Origin: Hyphochytrium catenoides
Taxonomy: Eukaryota > Protista > Hyphochytriomycota
Length of the DNA stretch: 64,000 nucleotides
Direction of reading: 5' to 3'
Assembly: GCA_900088475.1 (NCBI GenBank)
Contig: FLMG01000484.1
Coordinates: forward strand, 45,692 to 109,691
Shown: positions 11,945 to 62,100 of the stretch, one piece after another
How the letters are laid out: the number at the start of each line of letters is the position of its first letter
Position numbering within the stretch: position 1 is the first letter of the stretch
Program-made: the position numbers and the translations under genes
The notes under the pieces: model-generated
The model's database searches: none
What the model saw: only the letters and a program-made list of their open reading frames with translations
What the model was told of the DNA's origin: nothing

Positions 11945-14900
11945 ATGTACGGCCGAACCATCTGCTTCCACGTGACGTGGCTCCTGGCTGTGTTGCCAGC
12001 AGCTATTGTCTTGGCAGAGTCCAGATTCTCCTTGGTTGCCAGCCGCGGTCCGTGCTTTGTACTTGCTCTGTGGAAGAGATTCAGTGATGCTGACATCCTA
12101 ACGACACGTTTTCCGGCCCGTCACCTGGGTGGACCTGCAATCGTCTCATTTCCTTAACTTCTCGCTCTGCCATTCCCAGGACTCTCCAAGGTGATAAATG
12201 GCATCCGGTCCACCGTTTCTAGGTCGCCAGCCCAAAGGNNNNNNNNNNNNNNNNNNNNNNNNNNNNNNNNNNNNNNNNNNNNNNNNNNNNNNNNNNNNNN
12301 NNCACACGGGAACGGTCGATGTAGGTCCTTTTCTCAATTTATCTAAAAGGCCGCCGCTTGAGCCCTCGTTCACAACCAAACAAGCCAATGCCACTGCATT
12401 TATTCTTTCCAACTCTCTCGAAGTTTGATCTCAATCTATCTTTGGCTCTGCTGCTCTTCGCCATCAACAGCATACGGTTAATGTGCTCCTTCAAAGATCT
12501 ACTTGTGCTTTTCCTCTCCAGTCTGAACTCCCTTTCTCCCGGTTATGCGGCGACTGCAGTGGGTGTTCGATAGTGGAGCACCTCTAGTCCATGCCTCGAA
12601 GTCTTCAGCAGACTTTCAGGGTGCCATTGTGCCGGCTACGGACGGACGAATAGTCCACATCGTAGACAGCACGGTGAACACTCTGGATATTAAAGCCCAA
12701 GACATAGTGAAAAAGAGTCCTTTCGTGAGCAATGATGGCAAGTCTTTGTTCACGGGGAAAAAGACCACCACTTTGTTTGTTCTGGACCTCAAGTCAGGAC
12801 AATCCACGGTACGACCTTACTGTGCGATCCACTGCTTCTGGACGTCTTTCTGCTGTGTTCGTTGCGTTCGCTTATTTCTCCAACGGCTTGGTCTCCTTAT
12901 AACGTTTTGCATTCACTCCTTTGCACTAAAGCCTTGCCCTTGTCATCCTTATAGTTCTGCCTACTGATGGTCTTATCACTCCTGCCTTTCTAGTAATTGT
13001 AGCATTCGTGTCGTGCGCAATTGTCTGGCAACCTTCTCTTATAGTTTCTTCGCCCTTTTTCTAAGACTGGATAATCAGGCTTCTTGCTAATCCTGGCCTT
13101 TCTTGTGATTCGTCCAGATGACTCTTGCCGATCAATGCCCACAGCCGGACCTGAAGTCAACGGCAGGTCTTCTTTCTCGGGAAGAGAGGACAGAAGATGA
13201 CGGCCAAGAGATAGAGGATGACCTCTCGGTGGAAGTGGAGGAAGAAGAAGACTTGTATAACAATGCTGAAGAACCCTATCATGACTCTCAGGAAGACATC
13301 ATTCCTGAAAAAGATCGACCGGCGATGTGGGTCAGCAGAACTGACTATGCGGTTCGTGCGTTTAGCACCGAGCTTAGAGCTCAGCAGTTTGAGTTTACCT
13401 ACAGGTATTATCTCCTGATAACAGTACGGTAATGCATCTCAGTCTGACTTTTTGGCGGCCCTCTTTCGGCTCTGGGATGCTGGCCAGCGATTTGCGTATC
13501 CTCTCCCATTCTAGGGACAGCTTGCAGTGTGGCGATGGAGTCCCCGTCAACTTAAAGGATATCGACCTTGTCGTGGGCGAATCAGGTAAACACTTTTGGT
13601 GCTAGATACAAGCAGGGTGAACGACAGCTATGAAGATGGAACCACACGGGAAAGACAACTGAAGCAATGTCGTAGAGGTGTAAACCTGGAAGGAAGCCGA
13701 GTTCTAAAACCATGGAGCTCTTAAGATGTTACGGATTTATACTCAAAGCTTCGCCTTATTCTACTTCCGGTCTAGGCGTCCTGCACTACCGCGAGCGCAT
13801 TTCAGGCAACGTGTGGTCTGCCGATTTGGGCTCTCACATAGTAAACGTTTTGAGCCCTTCAACAGCCAACACTCTTCCTCTGAAGAGACTTGGGCATGTG
13901 CAGGGAAGCATGCAAGACGTTACCGTCACATCGGATGTGAGAGGAGGAGACGCAGCTGATACTGCCCTACTTCGGCTCGATCAGCGCGGAGAGCCGTTCG
14001 CTGTCACAGGTTCACTCATCGACTCCTTTGGGTTTGTTTGGAACGAGGGAGAATGGCAGGTATGAGAGATGCACCACCAAGCCAGCTGGTAGTTTCTTAG
14101 CCTGGCTTGTGCATTGTTAGCCTGGCTCTTGCACTGCTGCACCTTGCAGTTTCCTGACCCGATGATGTCACCGACTAGGCGGTCAATAACCCTGGCAACA
14201 ACGATAACGCAGCAGTTATTCCTTTTGTGAGGCAGCTATTGGACTCCGAGGCTGATAGTGGACGATCTGGAAAATGCCACGACGGAAGCTTCTTGTGCTT
14301 GGTGGGTTTACTTACGACAAATCTTAGCACCGAAGGTGAGAAGCATGCTTCCAAGGCATCGCTGTGTTGTGGCTCCTTATGTTCCCTTTTGGCGCCAACA
14401 AGAGTCTGAGAATCTGTGTGATAGCTCCTTGGTATGAGCTATAGGGATCTAGCTTACGACAAAGAGTCAGATTTCTCGCTGTTAGTCTAGCATCACCATC
14501 GCCCTTTAGCCTGGTCTGAGTCTACCTTCGGTGACTTCTTGTCAGACTAACGTCACCTCTGCAGCTGTACTGAGTCGTTTTGACTACATATGGTCGGATC
14601 CGCTGGTTTGGCTTCTGACAGTCCTTAGCACCTTGCTGCTTCTGGCAGTTGTTTTCCTTATGGGTACAGTTTACCGCCAGTGGAGGCAAATAAAGAGCTC
14701 AGGTACCAATCTGTTTGCGGTATTATGACCTATAATACTGGTTGTCTGTTCTGCAGTCGCTGACTTTCTTTCTATTATGTTCAGCAGCTGACGTAAAGCA
14801 AGAATCGCAAACCCAAAATGGAACGAACGAAGAATCCACCCTGGCAAGGGCGCGCCGCGACAGCGCAGGGTTTATTTGCGTGGGCTCTCTGAAACTGTCT

Positions 14901-17900
14901 GATGAGGTACTAGAATTCTTCAAAGTCCGCGAAAACTAACAGGAATTGGACCCCTTGTAAGTTCTCAGTTGCCCCTAACTTTCCTTTCTTCTAATTTGAC
15001 AGATTTTGGGGTACGGAAGCCATGGGACAGTGGTATATGCAGGGCTTCTGGGTAATAGGCAGGTAGCTATCAAGAGAATGCTACGACAATTCCACAGCAG
15101 CGCGGACAAGGAGGTCAGAGTTATCTGCTTTCTCATAATAGTTATCCTTCATAGTCGTTCTCAAAGTATTTGGTTATATTCAAAGTCTTGCTTTGGTCTG
15201 TGCATAAGCTCGACTTACTTGGTGATTGATGTGATGTCGTTTACGTTCTCCAGTCCTACCTCATGGGTCAACAGGGCTAAAGTTCTCTTATATCCCACAG
15301 ATTCAGCTGCTGATCCATTCAGATGGGCACCCCAACGTGGTGAGATACTTTGCAAGAGAAGTAGAGGGAGACTTCGTGTACCTCGCACTCGAGCGGTGTA
15401 AGGTAAGGTTTCGCAATGACTGGGAGACATCATAGCGACTGGAAAGAGTCAGAGGATTACGAACAATGAGAGCCGATAAGGAGAGAAGATGGAGATGCAG
15501 CATATCCAAAGACAAAGTGGCAAGCTACTAAGCGATAACTGTAGGGCTCGCTATCGGACTTTCTTGCCACTGTTAAGGCGGCGGAAAGCCGTTCTCAGGT
15601 GCTTACCTCAAATTTCCTCCCCAAACCCTTGCGGCGGTGGCTGCGAGAATTGGGTTCTGGAGTTGCTCACCTTCACTCTCTAAAAATCCTGCATCGGGAT
15701 CTAAAACCGGGCAATATTCTGATCTCTGATGAGCCGATTAAAGGTACCCATACCAGAATGTCCTCTCTTGCTTCTAGCGGCAGCTGGCCCAATGTTAAGT
15801 GGCAGGTCCGGTCTGTTTTCAAGTGATGGTCGAGTCCACCCTTCAACTTTAAGTGCCTCAGTCGTGTTACTTGTTCGACGGCTGCGGACCTATATTGTCA
15901 CAGAGCAATCCGTCACAAGCCAATTTGCTCTCCGTTCTTTTAGGTTTCTATCTCGGGAGACCGAAGATCTCCGACATGGGCTTGGGCAAACAACTCGATC
16001 AAGATCAGAGCTCATTCGGCCATAGCTCTTTCGGTCTAAGGCGTCAGAAGCTAAACCCAGGCAGCAATGAAGACGATAAGGATGAAAGCTCAGCAAGAGC
16101 TCCTGGAAGCGTAGGCTGGCAGGCACCTGAGATTGTTGCTCTTAGGGGTGCAAACTTACCTTTCTCGGAGGGGTCTGAGACCTCCGCTGAGGCACCGTCC
16201 AGGCGCCATATTAATGGTGCCGATGATGGAGAGGCCAGCGACAACTCTAGCAGTGGCCGGGCGATCCTGTCTAAGCGGACGGCGGCTGTGGACATCTTCT
16301 CTCTGGGCTGCGTATTCTACACGGCGATAGACTCCGGTAATCATCCTTTTGGAGAATGGTTCGAAAGAGAAAGGAACATTATTATGGTAAGATCTAACCG
16401 TTTTCTGAAAGTTAGCACGTAAAGCCAGAGAACCTGGCAGAAAGAGTACGGAAATCGCAGACGGGGAGATGAAAAGATGACTCTCTTCTCTGACATCTCC
16501 TCTCAACATCATCTACTATGGTAGGGTGAGAAGAACCTTAGGGCACTCCGTCAGCTGCCTACAGCGCGTCATTTGCTTTCACAGATGCTAGACCAGGAGC
16601 CTGCGGCACGGCCCTCAGCGGCAGAGGTAGTAGGCCATCCTACCTTCTGGGAAGAGGAGAAAACCATTGCCTTCTTGCAGGACCTCAGCGATCGACTGGA
16701 TAAGGAGGACCGGAATGGACCACTAATTCAGGGTGGGATGAAGGTTCCTTCGTATTATTCGGCTTAAAGCGCTGCGGTCTGACACCTTGACCACCTGTCC
16801 ACGTGTGAATTTGACTTCCTTGACTCCATGTTACCCGGTGCTTAGACCTAGAGTCTCGCGCCAATCGTGTCTTTCCGGACTGTAGCTGGGAGGGCCAAGT
16901 GGACAAGCTGCTCGTTGAATGCATGCTGAAGTACCGGCGATACAACTATAACTCCTTAGCCGACTTCTTGAGGCTTTTTCGAAATGAGAGACATCATTAT
17001 CATGAGCTTCCGCAAGAGGCACAGCAGGTCCTTACTTGGCTGGCCCTTCCACCTCGTTGATAGCTAGTAACTATGCGTGCTGCGGTACACATCATTACTG
17101 GCTACCGTTCTCGCTGATCTTTCACTTTGCTTGTCCTCCGTTAGTGATTGCCAGCATCTCTAACGCAGCAGGACGATTATGTGGGCTGACTTGATCTGTG
17201 TACCATCCGTTTTTAGCTACTCGGAGAGTTGCCGGAGGGCTTCCTCGCCTACTTTCTCAACCGTTTCCCGTCGCTTTTGATCACGTGTTACACTTTTGCC
17301 TCTGAGTACTTCTACGACGAAAAGCTGTTCCAGAGCTATTTTGGGCCCGCATCCAAGCGCTTCGCGGTGCGTACTTCTCCTGCTACGTCTTCAATTCGCG
17401 TCTCTTATGCAGAACTTCTAATTTATCGCCTTTAGTGCGAACTTCGTCTATTCATATGACTCATATGAACCTAGAAACTGTCATATGAGTTGTAGAGCCA
17501 TGAGTCACAGACTAGTCTCATCCATAGCATCCTTTTCCTTTCTGCATTGCATGTCGGTACATCGTAGCTAAAAGCACAGAAGCGACAGTCAGGGCAAACT
17601 CGCTCTTGCATTCTTTGGCGAGACCGCCTCAAAACTCCTCGCGGATGGCTCAGGCCGGCACCCGAGTGGATTGCTGATACGTCTTTCCGGGTGCGGTCGG
17701 CATTGAAGGATAATTTGAGCCGCACAGACGAGCGCTACCGCACTTCCTTTTGTGCTAACTGGATGAAGAGCACTGGTTTAGAGTGCAGATTTGGTAAGCG
17801 AATTCAAAACACGGAACTAGCGCGTATGAATGAGGAGTCCGAGCTCTGATGCGGGATGGAGCCGCTTTAATCCCTTGAGGAGCCATCCTTTGTAAAGCCT

Positions 17901-18532
17901 GCGGCCATCTTGAGGCCTCCGAGAAGTCGCCGCGCTACCTCGGCCGCGGCGGGTAAGACAATTATTGACCAGATGGCTCCTTTTTGCAGGCGCTCGATGT
18001 GCATTTGCACATGGTCATCATGAATTAAGGTTGTTTAAGGATCAGATTGACCGATGGGCGGACGATGGCACTCCTCTTCCTCTTCTTGCGCTGGGAGGGA
18101 AGAACGGGGACAGTGTGGCCAGCGATAAGCTCCCACCAAAGACCAAAACGAAGGTGAGGCTCCTCCGCTTTCCCTTAATTTCATACAGCTCTGATAGTTT
18201 AACGAAAAAATGTCTCCATTGGCTCACCGTCCACGCACAACCGTCGTCGATACAGCTCTGCAACTTTTTTGGGTCGCCTGTGGGGTGCAGAGATGGTGAC
18301 AACTGCAGGTACGAGGAGTCAAGATACTGCACCTTTGCTCTAATCCACCTTAGTGTCATCGTCAACGACCAACGCGTCCCTCCTCATCACTCCTCATGTC
18401 AGGTTCATCCACATCGGCGTTGACGTACCACACCCGGACTTTCTAATGACACCACCAATGGTGAGACCTCCTCCGGGGCCAGGGTTGCAGCGATCCTCAC
18501 CTCACCGGTTCCGTCCTCCCGGACACGCTTAG
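11945..18532 (+). CDS. IRE1: IRE1 ER-stress kinase/endoribonuclease with two extra C-terminal CCCH zinc fingers
   Basis: Signal peptide [24 protein letters not shown]; luminal motifs HTGTVD|[43 protein letters not shown]; TM helix [20 protein letters not shown]; kinase [48 protein letters not shown]; KEN domain [15 protein letters not shown] and FLNRFPSLL. 5' exons are uncertain because of the gap at 12239-12302. Confidence 0.92.
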
Positions 18533-18942
18533 CAGAAAGATGGACCAAGCGTACAGGGACCCATAACCGGACATATCGGCCGGGGAGCATATCCTTGAAT
18601 CCCGGGTTGCCTTCCTCATGGGGTTTAAACCCGTTAGATGTGCATATCTATTTATGACCCGCCTATGAGGCGGAGTTTATACCCATTACCGTTTGATTCA
18701 AGCTCTTTCCATAATCTCTGTATAAGTCTCTTAGTGATGGTTAGCTTTTGAAATGCGATATCACACCCAAGAAGAACACGGAGTGTACCACGGTAGATAG
18801 TAAGGCGACACGCTCCGTGAGAACATATTGCAAATTAACTTAGAGGGTCATAAACTGAACCAAAAGATGGCAAAGAAGAGAGGGCAAGCCTGCTGTCTGC
18901 TGTCTCCTCTTGACCACCCCCTAAAGTCTTGGCCTAATTCCC

Positions 18943-21900
18943 TCAACCCCAAATGTCCTTCACATATCGCTCGCGTTCAACCAAATTCTTCAAAGTCAGC
19001 TGCGCTTCCTCTTGCTTCATTCCCTTCTCTTGCAAAATCCGCAAGAGCTGTGAGTCTACGTCCTTCACCATCTGCAGTCCTCCGCACACGTAGATGATAC
19101 CTCCTCGCTCAAGAAGGTGTTCGCGAAGAACGTCGCCATCTTCTTCCAGTAAGTGTGTCACATACTGCTTGCTGAGGTTCTCCCTTGAAAATGCTGTTCG
19201 AAGACGCTGGAGTGTGCCATTTTTCTGGAACTCTTCCATTTCGGACCTAAATATCCAGTCCTCGGATGCTCTGCGACAGCCAAAGTACAGAGAAATAGAC
19301 CCAAACTCTTTGAAGCAAGGGTTGGTTATATATTCAGAGTCATCCTCGTGTCCGACCTGGGAAAGATAGATTGTCTGAGCTGAAGAATTCACTCTTACGA
19401 AGGACCGACCAGAGGGAACAGCTACCCTCATAGAAGGTAGCAGCAAGGACTAACAAAGAGACAAAGCTGGCAGTCATGCGGGGGAAAGGGTGAAGCAGCA
19501 TTCCCAGGATGTCCCTTCAGCTTAATTTAGCGGACGCTCAAGAATGACAGTGCCATCTGTGGTCAGCAAAGCTGCAGCCTACCTCAAAGTCTCCTCGCCA
19601 GAAGCCCTGACAAACCTCGGAGACTATCTGCCTGGCCTTCTCCTTTTGCAGCTGGCGGTGTTCCAGAAAGCCAATGAAAGGGGCTATGCCCGTACCCGCA
19701 CCCACCATAACGATGGGCCACTTGGCATTAGCGGGAAGATTGAACTCCTTAGCAGGCCTAATGAACAGCGGTAGTAGAAACTGGGAGAAAGTCTTAGGTT
19801 CGCTCCCACTCAAAAGCTTGAGATGGAGCATATTTAACCGCGATTGTGGTGAACCCAGGTCGAGTAAAGTTGCAGCGAGGAACGATCCACCAGAGTACGA
19901 AGGTATGCGGGACTACACGCGTTACCTTCCGGGTTGGGGACTGGCCAAACTGCTTGGCTACCTCCATCATCCAAGAAGTGCAGAGACCTTGCCTACGAAT
20001 CTTCCCCTATCAGACATTCTCCCGTCTTAGTTGATAGCAAGGTGGAGGTTGGTCGAGAGAGAGAGAGATACCATGCGATTGACGAGACAGGACGACGATA
20101 GTAGGACGTGTAAGGCAAAAAGAAGATAGCTTATCCTGGTCAAGTCAAGACATGAGTAAGGATACGACAAACCAGGAGCCACTCACATCACAACCCACAG
20201 GAGCAAGCTCGTAGGTCAGCCGAGAGAAGGCTATTGACAGGTGATTCTTGTCCTTCAGGGGTGAAGAGCAAACAGAATAGTAGCGCGCGTGCTGCTGCGG
20301 AACGACAGACAGGAAGTGGTCCAATGGGGGATGACAGGATGGAAAGAGCTCAAGAAGCTCAGGGATGCTGAGCTGCTGCTCTTCCACAAAGGCCTATGAC
20401 ATAACCCCTCTTAGATCTCCTCGCCGTTTAAAGAACTGCCCTTCGCTGCTCTCCTGTATCTTCCGTCTTACTCCTCATACCTCACGCCACAATCCCCCGA
20501 GCCTTGTCGCTTAGTGAAAGTCCTAACGAAGACTGCTCCAGAGAGTCTTACCTTGTACATCTTCTTTCCTGAAATGCTAGAGATGAAAAGGAGTTGCTTT
20601 CTTTCTTCCGCGTCCTCGCAGTACTCTGCCAGCATCCGCAACATGTTCTTCCTTGGACTGCTTTTCAAGTCCACAAACCGTCTGAGTAATTCTCTAACAG
20701 TGCTAATAGTGGGAAGATAGGAAGGGATATCGGCATTTGGGGTCACACTCTCTAGGGCAATGGGCCTGTCCGGCTCAGTCACTCTTAGGCTCTCTAGCAT
20801 GGAGTCCACAACCTGCTCTTCGTTGGGACATAGGACCCCAATGGCATCACCAGGCGAGTACGTTATACCTATAAACAGAAAGAACGAGGCGAGAGAACAT
20901 GAGGGGAAACAGAGCACGTCTCAAACAGTTGAGGACAATAGCAAGCAGAGCCGACTTACCAGAGCCATTCAGGTCCACCGTCAGCTTTGCTACGGGCTTT
21001 TCACAATCAGACGCGGTGAGAATGGTGCTAGCAATGACTGGGGCGTAGAAAGGGTGAGTGTAAGTGAACTTCTGATTATCCTGTACAGTCAGGAGACGAA
21101 ATGTCAGTCTCAATAATAACAGTGGAATTGAGATCGCTACCATGGAGTACCTGCTTCGCGTCTGAGAGCATAACAGATTCCGCAATGTGCTGACTGAGTG
21201 AAGCAATCTCTTGCTCCTGGAGTGATCCCTTCTTTGCTTGCACCGCCGCAGTAGGCAGCACCTTTAGGGTTACGGCAGGAAGCGCTGGAAGTCTTTCAGG
21301 AACACATGCCGGGTCATTTTCAGTGCAGAAGCTCCCATAGGGATGAACGCCCGAGACCAGACACGAGTTTTGGCGCTTTGGGAGTCCTTTTCCAGCCTTT
21401 GTAGAAGCTTTAGACTCCTCTTCAATCTGGGAGCCTTCACCGACTGCTTTGTTGCCCGCGTTAGCGCATGACGTCGAGGCGCTTGCTTTAGCTAAGGCCC
21501 CCCACAAGCCCTCAAGCCAGGGTTCTACCGTGTCTTCCAGTCCAATGGCTTCATCGGCACATCCTAAAGGATAAAAGTGCTTGGCTCCCAGGTCGGCTAA
21601 GCGCTTATCAATAGACTTTCCGATGTAGCTACCTCGCCGAAGTTTCAGTCAACACAGGCTACGAGAGAGGCATGACGAACGGAAAGCCGTAACTCACCAG
21701 AACTTGTCATAGTTCGTGTCGCCCAGCCCGAGAACCGTATACTGCACCTTTGCCAGCAGATCATTCTTATGGGTCCGTCGGCGTATGTATCTCCAGAACT
21801 TGTAAGCATTCTGAGGAGGGTCGCCGTTCCCAGTGGTGGAGCAAACGATGACCAAAAGGGGAGTGCTCTCAAAAGAGGGCTTGGTCTGAGCAAGACCTAG

Positions 21901-50341: not shown

Positions 50342-53300
50342 GATGATGGTACTTCCTTTTCGGAAGCTGATAGGTCTGAGAGGCTGAATGGTTGCTACTA
50401 GAGCCTAGGGCTTGCAGGCCACTGCGGCGTCAAGAGTAATATGACAGCAAATCCAAGCGTCAATAAGGAGGAGAGTGAAAGAGGTGCAAGCCGCCGAGAG
50501 CAGCCAGCGTGAAGGTACTTGCTTCTTCAGTGGGAGGATGGTCGCGGGGTAGGCAGTGGCCACGATCTTGGAAATTGGAGAATGAAGGAAGAATGAGCAA
50601 GGAACTGAATGAAGGAGCAAAAAATGAGGGATATTGTGCCCAAGCTACGTCCACGTTCTTTCTGCTGATGACTCCTACCATCTCATCCCTCCTTTTTACC
50701 CTTATAGGACGTTAGAGTGGCGGTATGCTGAACGACGTCTCTCATCGTCTAACAGTCAAAGACGTTTGCCTAATCTTGAGCTGTCTTCTTCCCACCACCT
50801 GCTGGCTTTTAGACTATCTCTCTCTTACATCTTCCGCCTTCTTCCATTTGGTCTTACAGACGCCAAGCATAATGCTTCACAGCCAGCAGCCCATGCTCTA
50901 CATATTAAGAGTCGCAGCTGCTTGTTGCCCCGATCGCCGAAGCTTAGAGGCTGCATACAGCTGCTGTGATGAGCGCTAGTCTGCATGGTTGTTTGGAGCA
51001 TCTGCTGGGCAGTGGGGGTTGGAAGGGCCAATAGAACAGCATGGTCGAGTGGAGCTAAGATAGAAGTGTTGAGCATACCGAGCAGCACATACAAAAGGCG
51101 TAGTAGGTACCACGGCGGTCTGAGAAGTGGGGACCTATATATAAGGAGGCAACTGACGAGAGAAAGAGAAGAAGAGAGAGCTGCAGCAGTGACAGGTCTT
51201 CTCCTCCCACTGTCGGTGGCAAGGAACTGAGAACGTGCGGTCACAAGACGATGCTGAGCCTAATAATGTGCGGCGGACCATGGTGGCGAGGGACTTGAGG
51301 GGCAACCTTCTAATGGTTGGCAGCTCATGGTCCACAGAGTGCTCGGGTTTGCCGTCTGCACTCAATGAGCATGACATAGATAGGTTGCCACCCTCTCAAT
51401 CAGTTCCGCTGTTGCCAAAGCTCATAAGAAGTCCCACGACCGACCCTCTTGCTCTTTATTCTCTCCTTCTCTCGTTTCCTCGCTTTATCCAGGTTGCGAT
51501 GATGTTTGGAGAAAAGTTCTCTTCTCTTCTTTCTTGGCATTCGCAAGATCTACGCCTCGTTGCGTTTCTTTCTCATCACCCTCTACTACTACTTCGATCA
51601 CATGATGTTTCGCGATCTTTCGCCCTGCCTTTCAGTGGTACTAGGGGTTGGCTGCAGAACCTGCTCTCCATCTTTACGGAAGCAGCACAAGGCCTGGTAG
51701 TCAATGCCTCCATACTTTGCGCCTCTATTCCTCCCGGCCTCGTATCTGCCAATGTTTTTCGGTGGGGAGAAGCGAGAACTGACCATAAGAACGCTTGGTA
51801 GTAGCCATCCAGTGTGTGGCCTAACAGTCTCACAATCTTCAAACCCTTGCTTGCAGCCTGACTCCTTTCTTGTTTTCAAAGGCCTTTTCTCTTCTTCATG
51901 GTCCTTCTTTCCTTTGCTTTTTGAAGAGCGGTGGCTTCCTTGCCTCTTTCCTAGAAGAACTACTTGCAGGTCGTCCTTACTAGTTCTACCAGGCCGACTC
52001 TCTCTCTTGGTGGACGGGTGCCTGTTCTCAAGCTTCGCTGTCTTCTGTCTTCATCCTAATTTCCAGCTTCCTCTTGTCATGTCATCTTTTTATAGGACTG
52101 TCGCCCTGTAGTTCTATTCTGCACGTGCTACATTGACCGCAGTCTAATGTTGCCTACAAGGGCGACATTATAAATAAAAAAGCGAACAGTTCGCCATGGT
52201 GTCCAAGTGGACAAAGTAACCTTGAACTATAACTGCCACTTCCATGCAAACTTTGCCTCGCCTGTCTGTCCTTTCGCCGGTTTATGCCATGAAAAAGTCA
52301 CTGCCACAAGTACCTTACAAAGTTGAAGTCAACTTCTTCCTCCTCTTTGCGGCCCCCCTTCCAAACCCCCTACTTTCCCTGAAATAAAGCCTTTACCTCA
52401 CCCTTGTCGATCTTGTAATGAGCAATAGGAGTGTCCTGGTTCTGGTTATAGAACTATCATTGCTTTTCAAATATTGTTACAAGTGATGGGGCAAGCTCCT
52501 ACTCTGTACTCGTACTCTTCTGTCTTACCATCACAATGGATGACGACTGTCCCCAAGGATGCAGGCAGGTTTTGTCAATGGAACACTTTTAGGCTGGGTC
52601 GGCATCATCACCCGGCGAATGGGCGAGGAAAGGGAAACCTGGCGATTGCGAGGGAAGGCCGAGAACCTGCTAATAATCAGTAGTTCTAATTATTCTAAAA
52701 AAGGCCTTTTTACAAGGGCTTCACGAGCCCCAACTGTAGCTTGAGGTAGTGCAGCGGAAAGAACCAAGAACAAAACGGAGGGGTAGTTCACTGTAGTGGG
52801 GGATGCGGTAAATACCAGTGTTATTGTTCGGTAAAAAACATGTGCGATGTGTCCTATAAATAAAGCACAGCTTTCTCTTCTATGGGCATGACATCGTCGG
52901 CTCGGGTCACCCCCTCGCTGCCCTCTAGTTTTCGCATAAAAATGTCATCATACTCAAGGGCCTATCTTCCAACAACTCTCTCTTCTTTGCTACGAGTAGA
53001 AAGAGTCTCTCCTTGTCTCTCACTTCTCTACTCTTTCTACAGTAATCCACTTTACATGCCTTTACCCTCTCCGCTCTCTAGGAACTCGAAGTCTATATCT
53101 TCTTCCTCCTCTCCAAGGATGATCTTGGGGGCTCAAGACGAAGGTTTTGTTCAGCGATCGATACTCTACGGAATACTACAATACAGAGTGGTTGATACGT
53201 ACACTCATTTTTCACCATCATGGGCCCAAAACCAAGGTTGTCTTTTTCTCCTTTATAATTTAAAATATAGAGTCTTTCTCTGCACTCTGGGAGCTTGCTC

Positions 53301-59180: not shown

Positions 59181-62100
59181 TATGATGATAACTCTTTTTT
59201 TCGTATTCTGATAGACGTAAGAGGTTGAATGGTTGCTAACAGTCTCAGGTCAGGCAAAGCATTGCGTCAAGAGAATGACAGCAGATCCAATGTTTCAATA
59301 AATGGAAGGGGAAAGAGGTGCAAAAGAAGCGAGAGAAGCCAGTGTGGAGGTTGCTTGCTTCAGTTGGGAGGATGGTCGCCGGTTTGGTTGTGGCCACGAT
59401 CTTGGAAATTGGAGAATGAGAGAAGAATGAGCAAGGAAACTGCATGAAAGGACAAGATTGAGGGATATGTTGCCCCTTTTTGCTATCTCCGCTCTCTTCC
59501 TGCTGATGAGTTCCACTATCTTCTTATGCCTCCTTGTACCGGTAGGAAATGCTGGAAGGTGGTATGCTGAACGACATCTCTCGTTGTCTAACAGTCAAAG
59601 ACGTTGGCCAGTGCCTCAGTCAGTCACGACGCTTTCTTCCCACCAGCTGCTGGCGTTCAGCGTCTCTCTCTCTCTCACACTCATGGCTAGGCATCTCACT
59701 CGCCGTCTATTCCTCTTACATAGGACTCAGAAACAGCTCTTAGGTACTTGAAAGCCAGCCCCAGTCCGCTACCTGCCACTACCTACATACTAATTCTTCT
59801 TGGCCCGATCGCCGAAGCTTAGAGGCTGAACGCGGCTGCGGTGAGGAGAGGTGCTTTGCCTGGTCGTCCAGAGCATCTGCTGGACAGAGAGGAAGAAGTT
59901 GGAATAGCCAATAGGACAGCAGCATGGACGAGGCTGGTGCAGAAGAAAAGAAGTTAACAATAAGCATAAGGAGTGCAGCATAGATGGAATGCTGACGAGT
60001 GGAGGGGAGAGTGGGGGAACAATGAGAAGAGAGAGAGAGAGCAGCAGTGGTGATGACTTGCCCACAGTCGGTGGCCACAGGATGAGGACAGGCTGCCACA
60101 AGGTGGGCAGTACCCCACGAAGGAGGCAGCGAAACATGGTGGCGAGGGACTTGAGGGGCAACATTCTATGATTCGTCGTCCGTGCTTTGGCTCTTGCCCA
60201 ACTGGACCTAGCACCAGGCAGGACAAAATTGCCACCTTTACCCTTCATCACAGCTGCTGCCAAAGCTCATTGCCAAAGTTCAAAGGAAGCACCACGACTC
60301 TGCTCTTCGGCTTCTCCTCCTTCATAGAGGTTGTTGGAGAGTCCTCTCCTTGGATGGCATACAGTAGATCTAAATAAGCGTTGCCCGTCTTCTTAACTGC
60401 GACTACTCTTCTTATATGTGATAGCAACAGTATCATGACGTCCGGCCACCTGCTTATTAGGTGTGTTCTAGGACGGTAGGCAATAGTAGCTGGTAGGACA
60501 AGGCAGCAAACTCTTCTCTCTTGCGCGGGAGTGGAGCACAGGGGCCTGGTGCGCCCATCTTCTGTGCCTTTATTCCTCTTTATTGCCGCGTTCTTGCCAG
60601 TCCTTCCATAAGGGAAAGGAGGACGGACTCAACTTGATGGCTCAATTTTTCCTCGTCCAACATGGAATCAAAACTCCTAACTTTTGCCTTGCAGTGCCTG
60701 TACCTTTCCGTGTTGCTTGTCATGATTCTTCTTTCTCTCCTAGCACTTATAAACAAGGAGGAGCGAGGGGTGCAGTTGACCCATGGAATTTGTTCTCCTT
60801 GCCTGGCTCCGTTATCCTTGGCAGCTATTCTTGTCAACCTCGCTATGTCTGCCTCCAACCTTAGCTATGCACTTCGTCTGTCTTCTGTCCTCCAATGATG
60901 ATTACCTCTTACTCTGTTCCTCCGCCATGCAATGTCAAGGTCCTTCTACTTGCAAGCTTGACGCCCCACCGATCCAATGTTGTGTCAACAAGGGCAACAT
61001 TCTCCAATCAACTAGAACTTCTCCATGGTTCTGCCCTTTCTTTATTACAGAAAGTTGCCACTTCGCAGATTCTTAACCTTGCATGTTTATTTTGGAGTTT
61101 TCAGTGTCTTGAATACAATAATAATACACCTAGGACCAACTAGGAATGACAGGCCACCAGGTTCGAGGTTGGGCTGTGGAAGCTGGTGGCAACCGCTCTA
61201 ATAATCCGCGAGCAGTCATTGGTGTCTGGCCAAACATCAAGAAGGTGTACCCAATTGATACATATACATATAGTTCTATGTGTTCATAGAGTGTCAGAGC
61301 TTCGGCTGGACGCGGAACCAGAGATCTATGATGCAGGTTATTTATTATTACTCTACTCGTACCAAGAAGCAATGGGTGGGTTAGTAGACCCCAAAGCTGG
61401 CGGTTGTGGGGAAAAGAATGGCGCTACCTTGCAGTTGGGAACAACTGTGCTCCTGGTGCTACCTTTATCATAGGTAGAAATGCCTTGGAACAGGGGACAA
61501 CAGGAAGAAGGGGGCCGCCGACGGCTAGCACAGTCCAACTCATCATTCAGTACCTGCAAACGAAGTCCAACCAATGTTCTACTACCAGCAACAAGGAGAC
61601 AACAAGGAACAAGAAGGACGACATGCTGTTGTGGCGTGGACATGGTAACTACGTAGGGTAGACACACGTTAGAATTGTAAGCTCTGGGCATGGACGGCCC
61701 AGCCCTCCTATTTCATAATAGTAGTTCTGTACAGTACCTGTAAAATTGCCTATAGACAGTTATTATGTCAAAAGACATGGTTGTCTAAGGCAAGACAACA
61801 AGGAGAAGTGCTGTCTTGGAAAAAAAGAAGCGATAAGATTGACTTCGATAAAGTTGCAGCGGTCACCAGCCAAATAGTTCTTGCATAATTAAGGGTGCTG
61901 GTGGTGATCTCTCCTCCTTCCTGCTGTCCTCTGTTTTTGTGACCAGACAGGTTTCTCTTCCAATTCCGTTGCATGCCTCCGTCTCTACTACTTGGTAGAA
62001 TACTACTACGACTCCCTGTGAATGACAGGAGGTTATGTGGAACTGTCCAAAGAGCAGAACGTCAGGTAGGGTAGCGAACAGTGGTGAAAGAGGCTATCAA

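What the first reader, a model, noticed from the sequence alone, without database searches (positions are those of the whole stretch)
17569..18532. IRE1 extended by two CCCH zinc fingers: an ER-stress RNase with a built-in RNA-binding module
Seen: after the KEN domain, canonical in-frame splicing continues into [21 protein letters not shown]|[13 protein letters not shown] (C-x10-C-x5-C-x3-H, with a TIS11/TTP-like lead-in and HG..ELR tail). It then reaches KTKTK|[18 protein letters not shown]|FIH (C-x8-C-x5-C-x3-H) and a Pro-rich tail. Both fingers are split by introns and are invisible as whole motifs in the ORF track. Known: animal, fungal and plant IRE1 end shortly after KEN, and CCCH fingers bind single-stranded RNA, including AU-rich elements. 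Inference: a variant unfolded-protein response in which IRE1 selects mRNAs by sequence for RIDD-like decay, or recruits its splicing substrate directly. This is the best candidate for an undescribed system in the window.
Basis: partly seen in the sequence, partly recalled or inferred. Interest (0 to 1): 0.82.

Follow-up and report, generated by a model that had tools for sequence, protein, structure and literature searches.

The report
IRE1 with built-in TTP-type zinc fingers
The ER-stress sensor gene IRE1 in this protist very probably runs on past its RNA-cutting domain into two RNA-binding zinc fingers of the tristetraprolin type; hundreds of diatom and other protist IRE1 proteins share a one-finger version that nobody has studied.

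Summary
Four GT-AG-joined exons (17568-18532) follow the last KEN exon in frame. They encode two CCCH fingers, each split by an intron. No RNA run was listed, so splicing rests on sequence logic and comparison.

- No ATG reads directly into finger 1.
- The exon before finger 1 carries a W-x6-W motif, and with finger 1 it aligns colinearly with the post-KEN tails of IRE1 homologues.
- 82 of 107 homologues with a KEN motif carry such a finger after KEN. Several are single ORFs on genomic contigs or transcriptome peptides.
- In a tree built from kinase+KEN only, the window falls inside the finger-bearing clade.

The fusion is therefore very likely real, but it is not unique. It is the norm in diatoms and in an unnamed protist clade, and a 2013 HEPN survey lists "CCCH in some" KEN proteins.

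Two points appear to be new. Finger 1 matches the first finger of TTP/TIS11d and finger 2 matches the second. Finger 2 was found only in this window among the 271 proteins collected (nearly all IRE1 homologues).

The likely role, which is inferred, is a single-stranded-RNA tether that feeds substrates to the RNase. The scan noted this same stretch once more in an overlapping window of the same genome, and not on other DNA.

The parts
12388..17366 (+). IRE1 exons 1-15, a provisional model. They encode a signal/anchor-like N-terminus, the luminal sensor, a TM helix ([18 protein letters not shown], aa 404-421), a kinase ([15 protein letters not shown]) and the KEN RNase (RNERHH).
   Evidence: Spliced translation is 1130 aa with 18 GT-AG introns of 55-309 nt. 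tblastn of IRE1 homologues maps luminal, kinase and KEN pieces in order. Pfam gives PF06479 and PF00069 on exons. The 5' half (exons 1-8, especially 14179-14335) is only one of several stop-free solutions.
17217..17366 (+). Last KEN exon ([21 protein letters not shown]...[14 protein letters not shown]).
   Evidence: PF06479 positions 90-127 of 127, E 3.2e-8. Acceptor ...ttttag|CTA, donor GCG|gtgcgt.
17367..17567 (+). Proposed intron joining KEN to the extension (201 nt, GT-AG, phase 0). If it is retained, the frame stops at TAG 17433-17435 after 22 extra residues.
   Evidence: Eleven in-frame, stop-free GT-AG solutions exist and all of them fuse KEN to finger 1. There is no RNA evidence.
17568..17793 (+). 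Extension exon 1. It is open for 75 codons, and the only in-frame ATG lies inside finger 1. It holds the conserved W-x6-W motif and the lead-in plus first two Cys of finger 1.
   Evidence: translation. W10, W17, C45, W48 and C56 of window:17619-17792 are invariant across 24 IRE1 homologue tails. Searches give tblastn/phmmer colinearity.
17637..17669 (+). [11 protein letters not shown], the W-x6-W motif (consensus CRGWxRSxxEW in diatoms, RxW(Y/F)xxxxxW in the x5 clade).
   Evidence: Alignments (first W invariant, second W in at least 90% of 72 sequences). No match to any PDB chain and no Pfam family.
17733..18030 (+). Finger 1 with TTP-type lead-in and tail: RYRTSF-C-x10-C-x5-C-x3-H-GHHELR, interrupted by intron 17794-17989.
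   Evidence: Pfam PF00642 26.6 bits and PF25427 31.8 bits. PDB best matches are 9y10, 6nzl, TTP 1m9o (residues 8-40) and TIS11d 1rgo (residues 2-34), at E 2e-9 to 7e-9.
17990..18153 (+). Extension exon 2: the end of finger 1, then LFKDQIDRW (compare diatom VKEGKRNRW), a linker, and PKTKTK, the lead-in of finger 2.
   Evidence: (P0107, P0007 tblastn to 17995-18138).
18256..18308 (+). Extension exon 3: the first three Cys of finger 2 ([18 protein letters not shown]). The preceding intron 18154-18255 is 102 nt, in frame and stop-free.
   Evidence: (ORF 17965..18423 reads through it).
18259..18412 (+). Finger 2, C-x8-C-x5-C-x3-H ([20 protein letters not shown]), split by intron 18309-18402.
   Evidence: Pfam PF00642 21.6 bits. 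PDB best matches are the SECOND fingers of 6nzl (45-75), 9y10 (41-68), TTP (46-73) and TIS11d (40-67), at E 1.6e-8 to 2.2e-6. Unspliced, the sequence reads CRYEE, which has no His.
18403..18532 (+). Last exon: FIH of finger 2, a proline-rich tail, and the stop TAG at 18530-18532.

Best explanation
Positions 17568-18532 are the 3' end of the IRE1 gene. The gene has 19 exons and encodes about 1130 aa: luminal sensor, TM helix, kinase, KEN RNase, then a 190-aa C-terminal extension.

The extension holds a conserved W-x6-W motif and two CCCH fingers. These correspond, in order, to finger 1 and finger 2 of the tristetraprolin/TIS11 tandem zinc-finger domain. Finger 1 has two extra residues (x10 instead of x8), and the spacer between the fingers is 48 residues rather than 18.

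The protein belongs to a large, uncharacterised IRE1 subfamily (diatoms and other, mostly unnamed, protists) that carries the W-x6-W motif plus finger 1. Finger 2 was seen only here.

Likely mechanism, which is inferred and not shown:
- ER stress clusters IRE1 and activates the KEN RNase, as in all IRE1 proteins.
- The fingers bind single-stranded, probably U/A-rich RNA. Each TTP-type finger reads about 4 nt.
- Clustering therefore creates a multivalent RNA dock next to the RNase. It recruits or holds substrates for cleavage, either RIDD-like decay or a HAC1/XBP1-type splice substrate.
- This would play the role that a basic motif in the cytosolic linker plays in yeast Ire1 (PMC4279078).
For: Gene structure:
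- Phase-0 GT donor after KEN and phase-0 AG acceptor. The intron is 201 nt, within the 55-309 nt range of the gene's other introns.
- The extension exon is open for 56 codons before the finger lead-in and has no ATG there.
- No oomycete-type INR/FPR-like element lies between 17436 and 17567, whereas a 1-mismatch hit sits 48 nt upstream of the candidate start ATG at 12388 (weak evidence).

Homology:
- Post-KEN tails of IRE1 homologues align colinearly to 17640-17801 and 17989-18138.
- phmmer of the spliced extension against the homologue set gives E about 1e-11.
- W, W, C, W, C columns are invariant in alignment A1.
- 82 of 107 homologues with a KEN motif carry a CCCH finger after KEN.

Fusion shown independently of gene models:
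- P0266 is one 4.6-kb ORF on a 563-kb genomic contig.
- P0101 is one ORF on a Logan contig.
- MMETSP transcript peptides exist, for example P0151 (Attheya), P0011 and P0192.

Phylogeny: a tree built from kinase+KEN only places the window inside a 38-row clade (SH-aLRT 94) in which 36 rows have the finger.

Finger identity: (profile against TTP, E 2.5e-13).

AlphaFold2 of a diatom homologue gives the finger pLDDT 86-88 and the segment with the W motif about 80, while the KEN-to-extension linker is below 50. The tail therefore looks like a folded module on a flexible tether.

A second, unrelated finger type is fused to IRE1 in P0254 and P0270. Recurrent fusion argues for a functional link between KEN and CCCH.
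Against: - There is no transcript evidence for this organism; none was listed.
- If the 201-nt intron is retained, a normal-length IRE1 ends at 17435.
- Micro-exon solutions for an independent start exist on paper, for example ATG 17456 plus 24 nt spliced to 17568.
- No close relative (best about 50% identity) was available to test coding constraint on the extension.
- RNA binding, sequence preference and any effect on RNase targeting are untested.
- Finger 1 departs from the canonical x8 spacing, the Tyr of the finger-2 lead-in is Thr, and the spacer is 48 aa. TTP-like ARE specificity therefore cannot be assumed.
- The residue after RN in the RNase motif is Glu here. Of the 221 collected proteins with this motif, 202 have Lys and none has Glu, so RNase properties may differ.
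Confidence: 0.75

Rival explanations
1. Two genes. IRE1 ends at the in-frame stop 17433-17435, and the CCCH exons are a separate TTP-like gene. That gene would arise by fission or from an internal promoter, with a start codon in a tiny first exon inside 17436-17567.
For: The stop codon lies 22 codons after the donor if the intron is unspliced. Enumeration finds paper solutions such as ATG 17456 plus 24 nt, then an 88-nt intron to 17568. No RNA data exclude this.
Against: No ATG reads directly into the finger. The W-x6-W motif plus finger 1 is the tail of IRE1 itself in over 100 homologues, including single-ORF genomic and transcript-derived sequences. The window's kinase+KEN falls inside that clade. 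No promoter-like INR/FPR element lies in the gap.
Confidence: 0.07
2. The fusion is real, but the fingers do not choose cleavage substrates. Instead they might dock IRE1 on ribosomal, SRP or other structural RNA at the translocon, act as a zinc- or redox-sensitive regulatory element, or provide a protein-protein or oligomerisation surface. The conserved W-x6-W motif could bind back on the kinase-RNase.
For: The W-x6-W motif is as conserved as the finger and has no RNA-binding precedent. Diatom fingers replace the aromatic residue after the second Cys with a basic run (CPMRKKNKC), which suggests non-specific RNA or other ligands. AlphaFold2 shows ordered helices around the finger.
Against: Both window fingers keep the TTP-type lead-ins and the aromatic positions (CRFG, AFAH, RFIH) that contact bases in TIS11d (established knowledge of the 1RGO structure; the matches are). 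Independent fusion of a different CCCH type to IRE1 (P0254, P0270) is most simply explained by RNA handling.
Confidence: 0.2
3. Both forms are made. Regulated retention of intron 17367-17567 would give a canonical short IRE1, and splicing would give the finger-bearing form. This is not exclusive of the best explanation.
For: Retention gives a short, stop-terminated tail directly after a complete KEN domain. The later intron 18154-18255 is in frame and stop-free.
Against: No data support it. Homologues encoded in single ORFs cannot make a short form this way.
Confidence: 0.1

Closest known systems
Canonical IRE1/ERN1 (yeast Ire1p, human IRE1alpha, plant IRE1a/b)
   Same: Luminal sensor, single TM helix, kinase ([12 protein letters not shown]), and KEN RNase with the R-N-x3-H motif, in the same order.
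   Different: Canonical proteins end a few residues to some tens of residues after KEN. Here 190 residues follow, with a W-x6-W motif and two CCCH fingers. The TM-to-kinase linker is only about 35 aa, and the RNase motif reads RNERHH.
Diatom IRE1 proteins with a C-terminal CCCH finger, for example Chaetoceros tenuissimus P0233, Seminavis robusta P0209, Pseudo-nitzschia multistriata P0248. This is the architecture listed as 'CCCH in some' in PMC3710099 Table 1.
   Same: The W-x6-W motif, a short spacer, an (R/K)(Y/F)RTxxC lead-in, FAHGxxELR, then ...RW, all after KEN.
   Different: Diatom fingers are C-x10-C-x7-C-x3-H with a basic second loop, and there is a long disordered KEN-to-motif linker. 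They have no second finger and carry a conserved GGEDTYGAARSIE helix instead.
Unnamed protist IRE1 clade with CKDW...CPRGxRCDFAHG (P0053, P0066, P0101, P0266 and others; one entry is named IRE1 [Symbiodinium sp. KB8], P0268).
   Same: Finger spacing C-x10-C-x5-C-x3-H as in the window. These are its nearest neighbours in the kinase+KEN tree.
   Different: These proteins have a 60-90 aa insert (TGGP...V.AHER..ET.FKGGAH) between the W motif and the finger, and a single finger.
Tristetraprolin/TIS11d tandem zinc-finger (TZF) domain (PDB 1M9O, 1RGO)
   Same: Finger 1 matches TZF finger 1 (lead-in RYRTSF, C.FAHG..ELR). Finger 2 matches TZF finger 2 (PKxKTxLC, C.FIH). They are in the same order.
   Different: Finger 1 is x10 rather than x8. 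The inter-finger spacer is 48 residues rather than 18. The Tyr of the second lead-in is Thr. The module is fused to an endonuclease rather than recruiting deadenylases.
Regnase-1/ZC3H12A (RNase domain followed by one CCCH finger) and RNase L (ankyrin repeats + pseudokinase + KEN)
   Same: The logic of an endoribonuclease carrying its own ligand- or RNA-recognition module. RNase L shares the kinase-like + KEN core.
   Different: The Regnase RNase is a PIN/NYN domain, not KEN. The RNase L add-on is N-terminal ankyrin repeats that bind 2-5A, and it has no membrane sensor. This comparison rests on general knowledge and was not tested here.

Membership tests
IRE1 (ER-stress sensor kinase/endoribonuclease) | KEN/Ribonuc_2-5A domain with the catalytic R-N-x3-H motif | tested here: met
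   PF06479 on exons 16899-17033 (E 5e-12) and 17229-17366 (E 3e-8, to profile end). RNERHH keeps R, N and H.
IRE1 (ER-stress sensor kinase/endoribonuclease) | Protein kinase domain directly upstream of KEN | tested here: met
   [12 protein letters not shown] and SDMGLGK appear in the spliced model. tblastn of IRE1 homologues gives 52-73% identity on kinase exons. DMG is the majority form in this clade (191 of 235).
IRE1 (ER-stress sensor kinase/endoribonuclease) | N-terminal luminal sensor domain and a single TM helix | tested here: met
   Luminal pieces of P0053, P0066 and P0100 map to 12626-12832 and 13319-13402. A hydrophobic helix lies at aa 404-421. The exon model of this half is provisional.
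IRE1 (ER-stress sensor kinase/endoribonuclease) | ER-stress-dependent cleavage of a bZIP mRNA or RIDD | not testable with these tools
   This needs experiments.
IRE1 subfamily with a C-terminal W-x6-W motif + TTP-type finger (diatoms and other protists) | Motif and finger lie after KEN, colinear with the homologues' tails | tested here: met
   The kinase+KEN tree places the window inside the finger-bearing clade.
IRE1 subfamily with a C-terminal W-x6-W motif + TTP-type finger (diatoms and other protists) | KEN and finger on one mRNA in this organism | not testable with these tools
   No RNA run was listed. The link is supported only indirectly.
TTP/TIS11 tandem zinc-finger (TZF) domain | Two fingers that match TZF finger 1 and finger 2 respectively, in order | tested here: met
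   Finger 1 matches 1m9o residues 8-40 and 1rgo 2-34. Finger 2 matches 1m9o 46-73 and 1rgo 40-67.
TTP/TIS11 tandem zinc-finger (TZF) domain | C-x8-C-x5-C-x3-H spacing in both fingers | tested here: not met
   Finger 1 is C-x10-C-x5-C-x3-H. Finger 2 conforms.
TTP/TIS11 tandem zinc-finger (TZF) domain | 18-residue inter-finger linker and an (R/K)YKTEL lead-in on both fingers | tested here: not met
   48 residues lie between H1023 and C1072. The lead-ins are RYRTSF (conforms) and KTKTKL (Tyr replaced by Thr).
TTP/TIS11 tandem zinc-finger (TZF) domain | Binding of UAUUUAU-type AU-rich elements | not testable with these tools
   This needs binding assays.
Regnase-1/ZC3H12 RNases | PIN/NYN-type RNase domain next to the CCCH finger | tested here: not met
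   The RNase here is KEN (PF06479). The resemblance is in design only.

The most novel reading that the evidence does not exclude
The ancestral IRE1 of a large protist clade, including diatoms and this oomycete-like lineage, acquired a complete TTP-type tandem zinc-finger domain, and this genome alone still keeps both fingers. In these organisms IRE1 would be a bind-and-cut nuclease. It would read short U/A-rich single-stranded motifs with its own fingers and cleave the bound ER-associated mRNAs when it clusters. The IRE1 branch of the unfolded-protein response would then run mainly through sequence-directed mRNA decay rather than through a HAC1/XBP1-type transcription factor.
Probability: 0.2. 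Interest if true: 0.8.

Novelty: new variant of a known kind. Interest (0 to 1): 0.55.

Why it matters
How IRE1 picks its RNA substrates, especially for RIDD, is still debated. In yeast, recruitment relies on an mRNA zip code plus a basic patch in the Ire1 linker (PMC4279078).

A whole branch of eukaryotes appears to have hard-wired a TTP-type RNA-binding finger onto the RNase. That branch includes the ecologically dominant diatoms, some of which are genetically tractable. This gives a direct handle on the question:
- delete or swap the finger and see which RNAs stop being cut;
- determine its motif and predict the targets.

The window's two-finger version is the most complete example. It also hints at the origin of the module, namely a TZF domain.

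The finding has a practical side as well. Precomputed Pfam annotation misses the diatom fingers (no PF00642), so the architecture is invisible to domain-architecture searches.

Tried and rejected
- RNA evidence: the look-up of sequencing runs listed no RNA run, so read laying could not be used.
- The window's own annotated protein or a close relative: the representative search gave at most about 50% identity. I therefore had no near relative to test coding constraint or the second finger.
- Taxon names for the x5 clade: the listing of cluster members and the look-up of encoding contigs returned only metagenome/Logan records. One word search (P0066 tail) was swamped by low-complexity words. The ESM Atlas look-up gave nothing.
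- Literature: searches for IRE1 with CCCH, zinc finger, diatom, oomycete or C-terminal extension found only the one table cell in PMC3710099. The IRE1-bZIP survey PMC4891664 mentions neither zinc fingers nor stramenopiles.
- A match for the W-x6-W motif: the PDB profile search hit only the finger.
- Rfam on 12000-19500 gave no hit at E up to 0.1, so no known RNA family was found in the introns.
- The oomycete INR/FPR pattern is not enriched in the window overall (21 matches against 15.8 expected). Its absence from the KEN-finger gap is therefore weak evidence.
- The exact 5' exon model between 14060 and 14564 could not be fixed; 30 stop-free options exist.
- I did not fold the window's own spliced tail, because it has no reference form. 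A diatom homologue was folded instead, and only pLDDT is returned, not contacts.
Full report
**1. What is in the sequence**

The window is intron-rich eukaryotic DNA of about 50% G+C. On the + strand, an IRE1 gene runs from about 12388 to 18532.

I read the region by hand and checked it by spliced translation.
- The last KEN exon is 17217-17366.
- Its product matches the Ribonuc_2-5A profile up to the final profile position and ends ...[14 protein letters not shown].
- A GT donor follows in phase 0.

The frame then continues through four further exons:
- The AG at 17566-67 opens an exon (17568-17793) that stays open for 75 codons.
- This is followed by exons 17990-18153, 18256-18308 and 18403-18532, and the stop is TAG at 18530-32.
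- All junctions are GT-AG.
- The joined product reads ...[11 protein letters not shown]...[23 protein letters not shown]|[13 protein letters not shown]...PKTKTK|[18 protein letters not shown]|FIH..., followed by a proline-rich tail.

Finger 1 passes Pfam thresholds for zf-CCCH and zf-CCCH_UNK. Finger 2 passes zf-CCCH narrowly.

**2. One gene or two?**

No RNA run was listed for this stretch, so I have no direct transcript evidence. Four indirect lines agree on one gene.

(a) Gene structure.
- The extension exon has no in-frame ATG ahead of finger 1; the only Met lies inside the finger.
- No ATG between 17380 and 17735 reads directly into the finger.
- A stand-alone gene would need a 4-79 nt first coding exon plus an extra short intron.
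- The 201-nt KEN-to-extension intron is ordinary for this gene, whose introns are 55-309 nt.

(b) Homology.
- I searched the kinase exon against 1.84 billion representative proteins. The best IRE1 homologues nearly all have long tails after KEN.
- 82 of the 107 hits that contain the KEN motif carry a CCCH finger after it.
- Their tails align colinearly with window 17640-17801 and 17989-18138 by tblastn.
- The spliced window tail hits them at E about 1e-11 by phmmer.
- In a 25-sequence alignment, W10, W17, C45, W48 and C56 of the window exon are invariant. In a 72-sequence alignment the first W of the motif and the finger's C, W, C, C, F and H columns are invariant, and the second W is present in at least 90% of sequences.

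(c) The fusion elsewhere is not a gene-model artefact.
- P0266 is a single 4.6-kb ORF on a 563-kb genomic contig.
- P0101 is a single ORF on a Logan contig.
- Several diatom sequences are MMETSP transcript peptides.

(d) Phylogeny. A tree built from kinase+KEN only, with the tails removed, places the window inside a 38-row clade (SH-aLRT 94). In that clade 36 rows have the finger, and the two exceptions have short tails (100 and 139 residues after KEN), which may mean truncated sequences.

A weak extra point comes from an oomycete-type INR/FPR core-promoter pattern, a lead taken from other notes on this genome.
- It has a 1-mismatch hit 48 nt upstream of the candidate start ATG at 12388.
- It has none in the KEN-to-finger gap.

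I put the fusion at about 0.9.

**3. What kind of module it is**

Finger 1 matches the first finger of TTP-family proteins: PDB 9y10, 6nzl, TTP 1m9o residues 8-40 and TIS11d 1rgo residues 2-34, at E 2e-9 to 7e-9.

Finger 2 matches the second finger of the same proteins: 6nzl 45-75, 9y10 41-68, TTP 46-73 and TIS11d 40-67, at E 1.6e-8 to 2.2e-6. The match includes the PKxKTxLC lead-in and C.FIH.

A profile of 25 tails hits TTP at E 2.5e-13.

The window therefore carries both halves of a tandem zinc-finger (TZF) domain in the right order. It differs in three ways:
- a two-residue insertion in finger 1;
- a 48-residue rather than 18-residue spacer;
- Thr in place of the lead-in Tyr of finger 2.

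It fails the strict TZF definition, so I do not file it as a canonical member.

The upstream W-x6-W motif matches nothing known.

AlphaFold2 of the Chaetoceros tenuissimus homologue, run with a 72-sequence alignment, gives these confidences:
- most of KEN above 90;
- the KEN-to-tail linker below 50;
- the W-motif segment about 80;
- the finger 86-88;
- a following helix about 80.

That picture is a folded module on a flexible tether. Contacts could not be read from the tool output.

**4. Distribution and prior knowledge**

- The C-x10-C-x7-C-x3-H version (RTRLCNHWD..C.M.KK.KC.FAHGP.ELR) belongs to diatoms: Chaetoceros, Thalassiosira, Skeletonema, Seminavis, Pseudo-nitzschia, Cylindrotheca, Amphora, Attheya and Epithemia.
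- The C-x10-C-x5-C-x3-H version, which is the window's spacing, occurs in a clade of mostly metagenome or Logan sequences. One entry in it is named IRE1 [Symbiodinium sp. KB8]. Its gene model breaks inside the finger and runs into a mitochondrial-carrier gene.
- A different, plant-like finger type (C.FY.KTG.C.FG..CRF.HP) is fused to IRE1 in P0254 (two fingers) and P0270 (one finger). This suggests independent fusions.
- Precomputed Pfam annotation does not show the diatom fingers.

In the literature I found only one mention. [quoted passage not shown] An IRE1-bZIP survey across eukaryotes does not mention zinc fingers or stramenopiles, and other searches found nothing.

None of the 271 proteins collected (nearly all IRE1 homologues) has the second finger.

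**5. Mechanism (inferred)**

The sensor, kinase and RNase motifs are intact, so activation should follow the standard scheme of stress-induced clustering and trans-autophosphorylation.

The added fingers most plausibly bind single-stranded RNA.
- In TIS11d each finger reads a UAUU half-site through the lead-in and two aromatic residues. This is established knowledge of 1RGO.
- The window keeps these positions (RYRTSF, CRFG, AFAH; KTKL, RFIH).
- One or two weak fingers per monomer become a multivalent dock only when IRE1 clusters. That would couple substrate capture to activation.
- This is functionally analogous to the basic linker motif that docks HAC1 mRNA on yeast Ire1 clusters (PMC4279078).
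- The window's TM-to-kinase linker is only about 35 residues.

Alternatives are listed as rivals: docking on ribosomal or SRP RNA, a regulatory or protein-binding role, or alternative splicing that yields both forms.

**6. Verdict**

The fusion is real and plausibly an RNA-binding add-on, but it is a member of a widespread, already-listed and functionally unexplored IRE1 variant. It is not a one-off new system.
- The new elements are the TZF identity of the fingers, the conserved W-x6-W motif, the breadth of the subfamily, and the unique retention (or gain) of finger 2 here.

Noticed in passing
window 16980-16997 (RNERHH; Glu codon 16986-16988): The residue after R-N in the KEN catalytic motif is Glu. 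Among the 221 collected proteins with this motif it is Lys in 202 and never Glu. R, N and H themselves are kept.
   Followed up: partly
window 12239-12303: A run of N (assembly gap) lies about 85 nt upstream of the candidate IRE1 start ATG (12388) and just before an INR/FPR-like 14-mer at 12327-12340 (1 mismatch).
   Followed up: partly
window 14703-14906 (aa 422-470 of the model): The cytosolic linker between the TM helix and the kinase is only about 35 residues. That is far shorter than the yeast or human linker, which in yeast holds the mRNA-docking motif.
   Followed up: no
window 18154-18255: The intron between the two fingers is 102 nt, in frame and stop-free. Retaining it would insert 34 residues without breaking the protein.
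   Followed up: no
window 18943-19446 (- strand): A convergent neighbour gene encodes a flavoprotein reductase-like C-terminus (NAD_binding_1, E 1.7e-7). Its coding end lies about 410 nt from the IRE1 stop, so the two 3' UTRs must be short or overlap.
   Followed up: no
window 50572-50585 and 59406-59419 (- strand): Two identical exact matches (TCATTCTCCAATTT) to the oomycete-type INR/FPR core-promoter pattern.
   Followed up: no
P0268 (IRE1 [Symbiodinium sp. KB8], 1771 aa): The public gene model breaks after the second Cys of the finger and continues into a mitochondrial-carrier domain. It is probably a mis-spliced chimera. The break is near the place where the window's finger 1 has its intron.
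   Followed up: partly
P0254 (1184 aa) and P0270 (1232 aa): These are IRE1 proteins whose post-KEN tails carry canonical plant-like CCCH fingers (two and one respectively). They lack the W-x6-W motif and the TTP lead-in. P0254 falls outside the main finger-bearing clade in the tree (P0270 was not in it). This is probably an independent fusion.
   Followed up: partly
P0233:701-1363 model me14310475d94: Diatom tails have a confidently predicted helix (residues 622-637 of the model, GGEDTYGAARSIE region) after the finger. The window has no counterpart to it.
   Followed up: no
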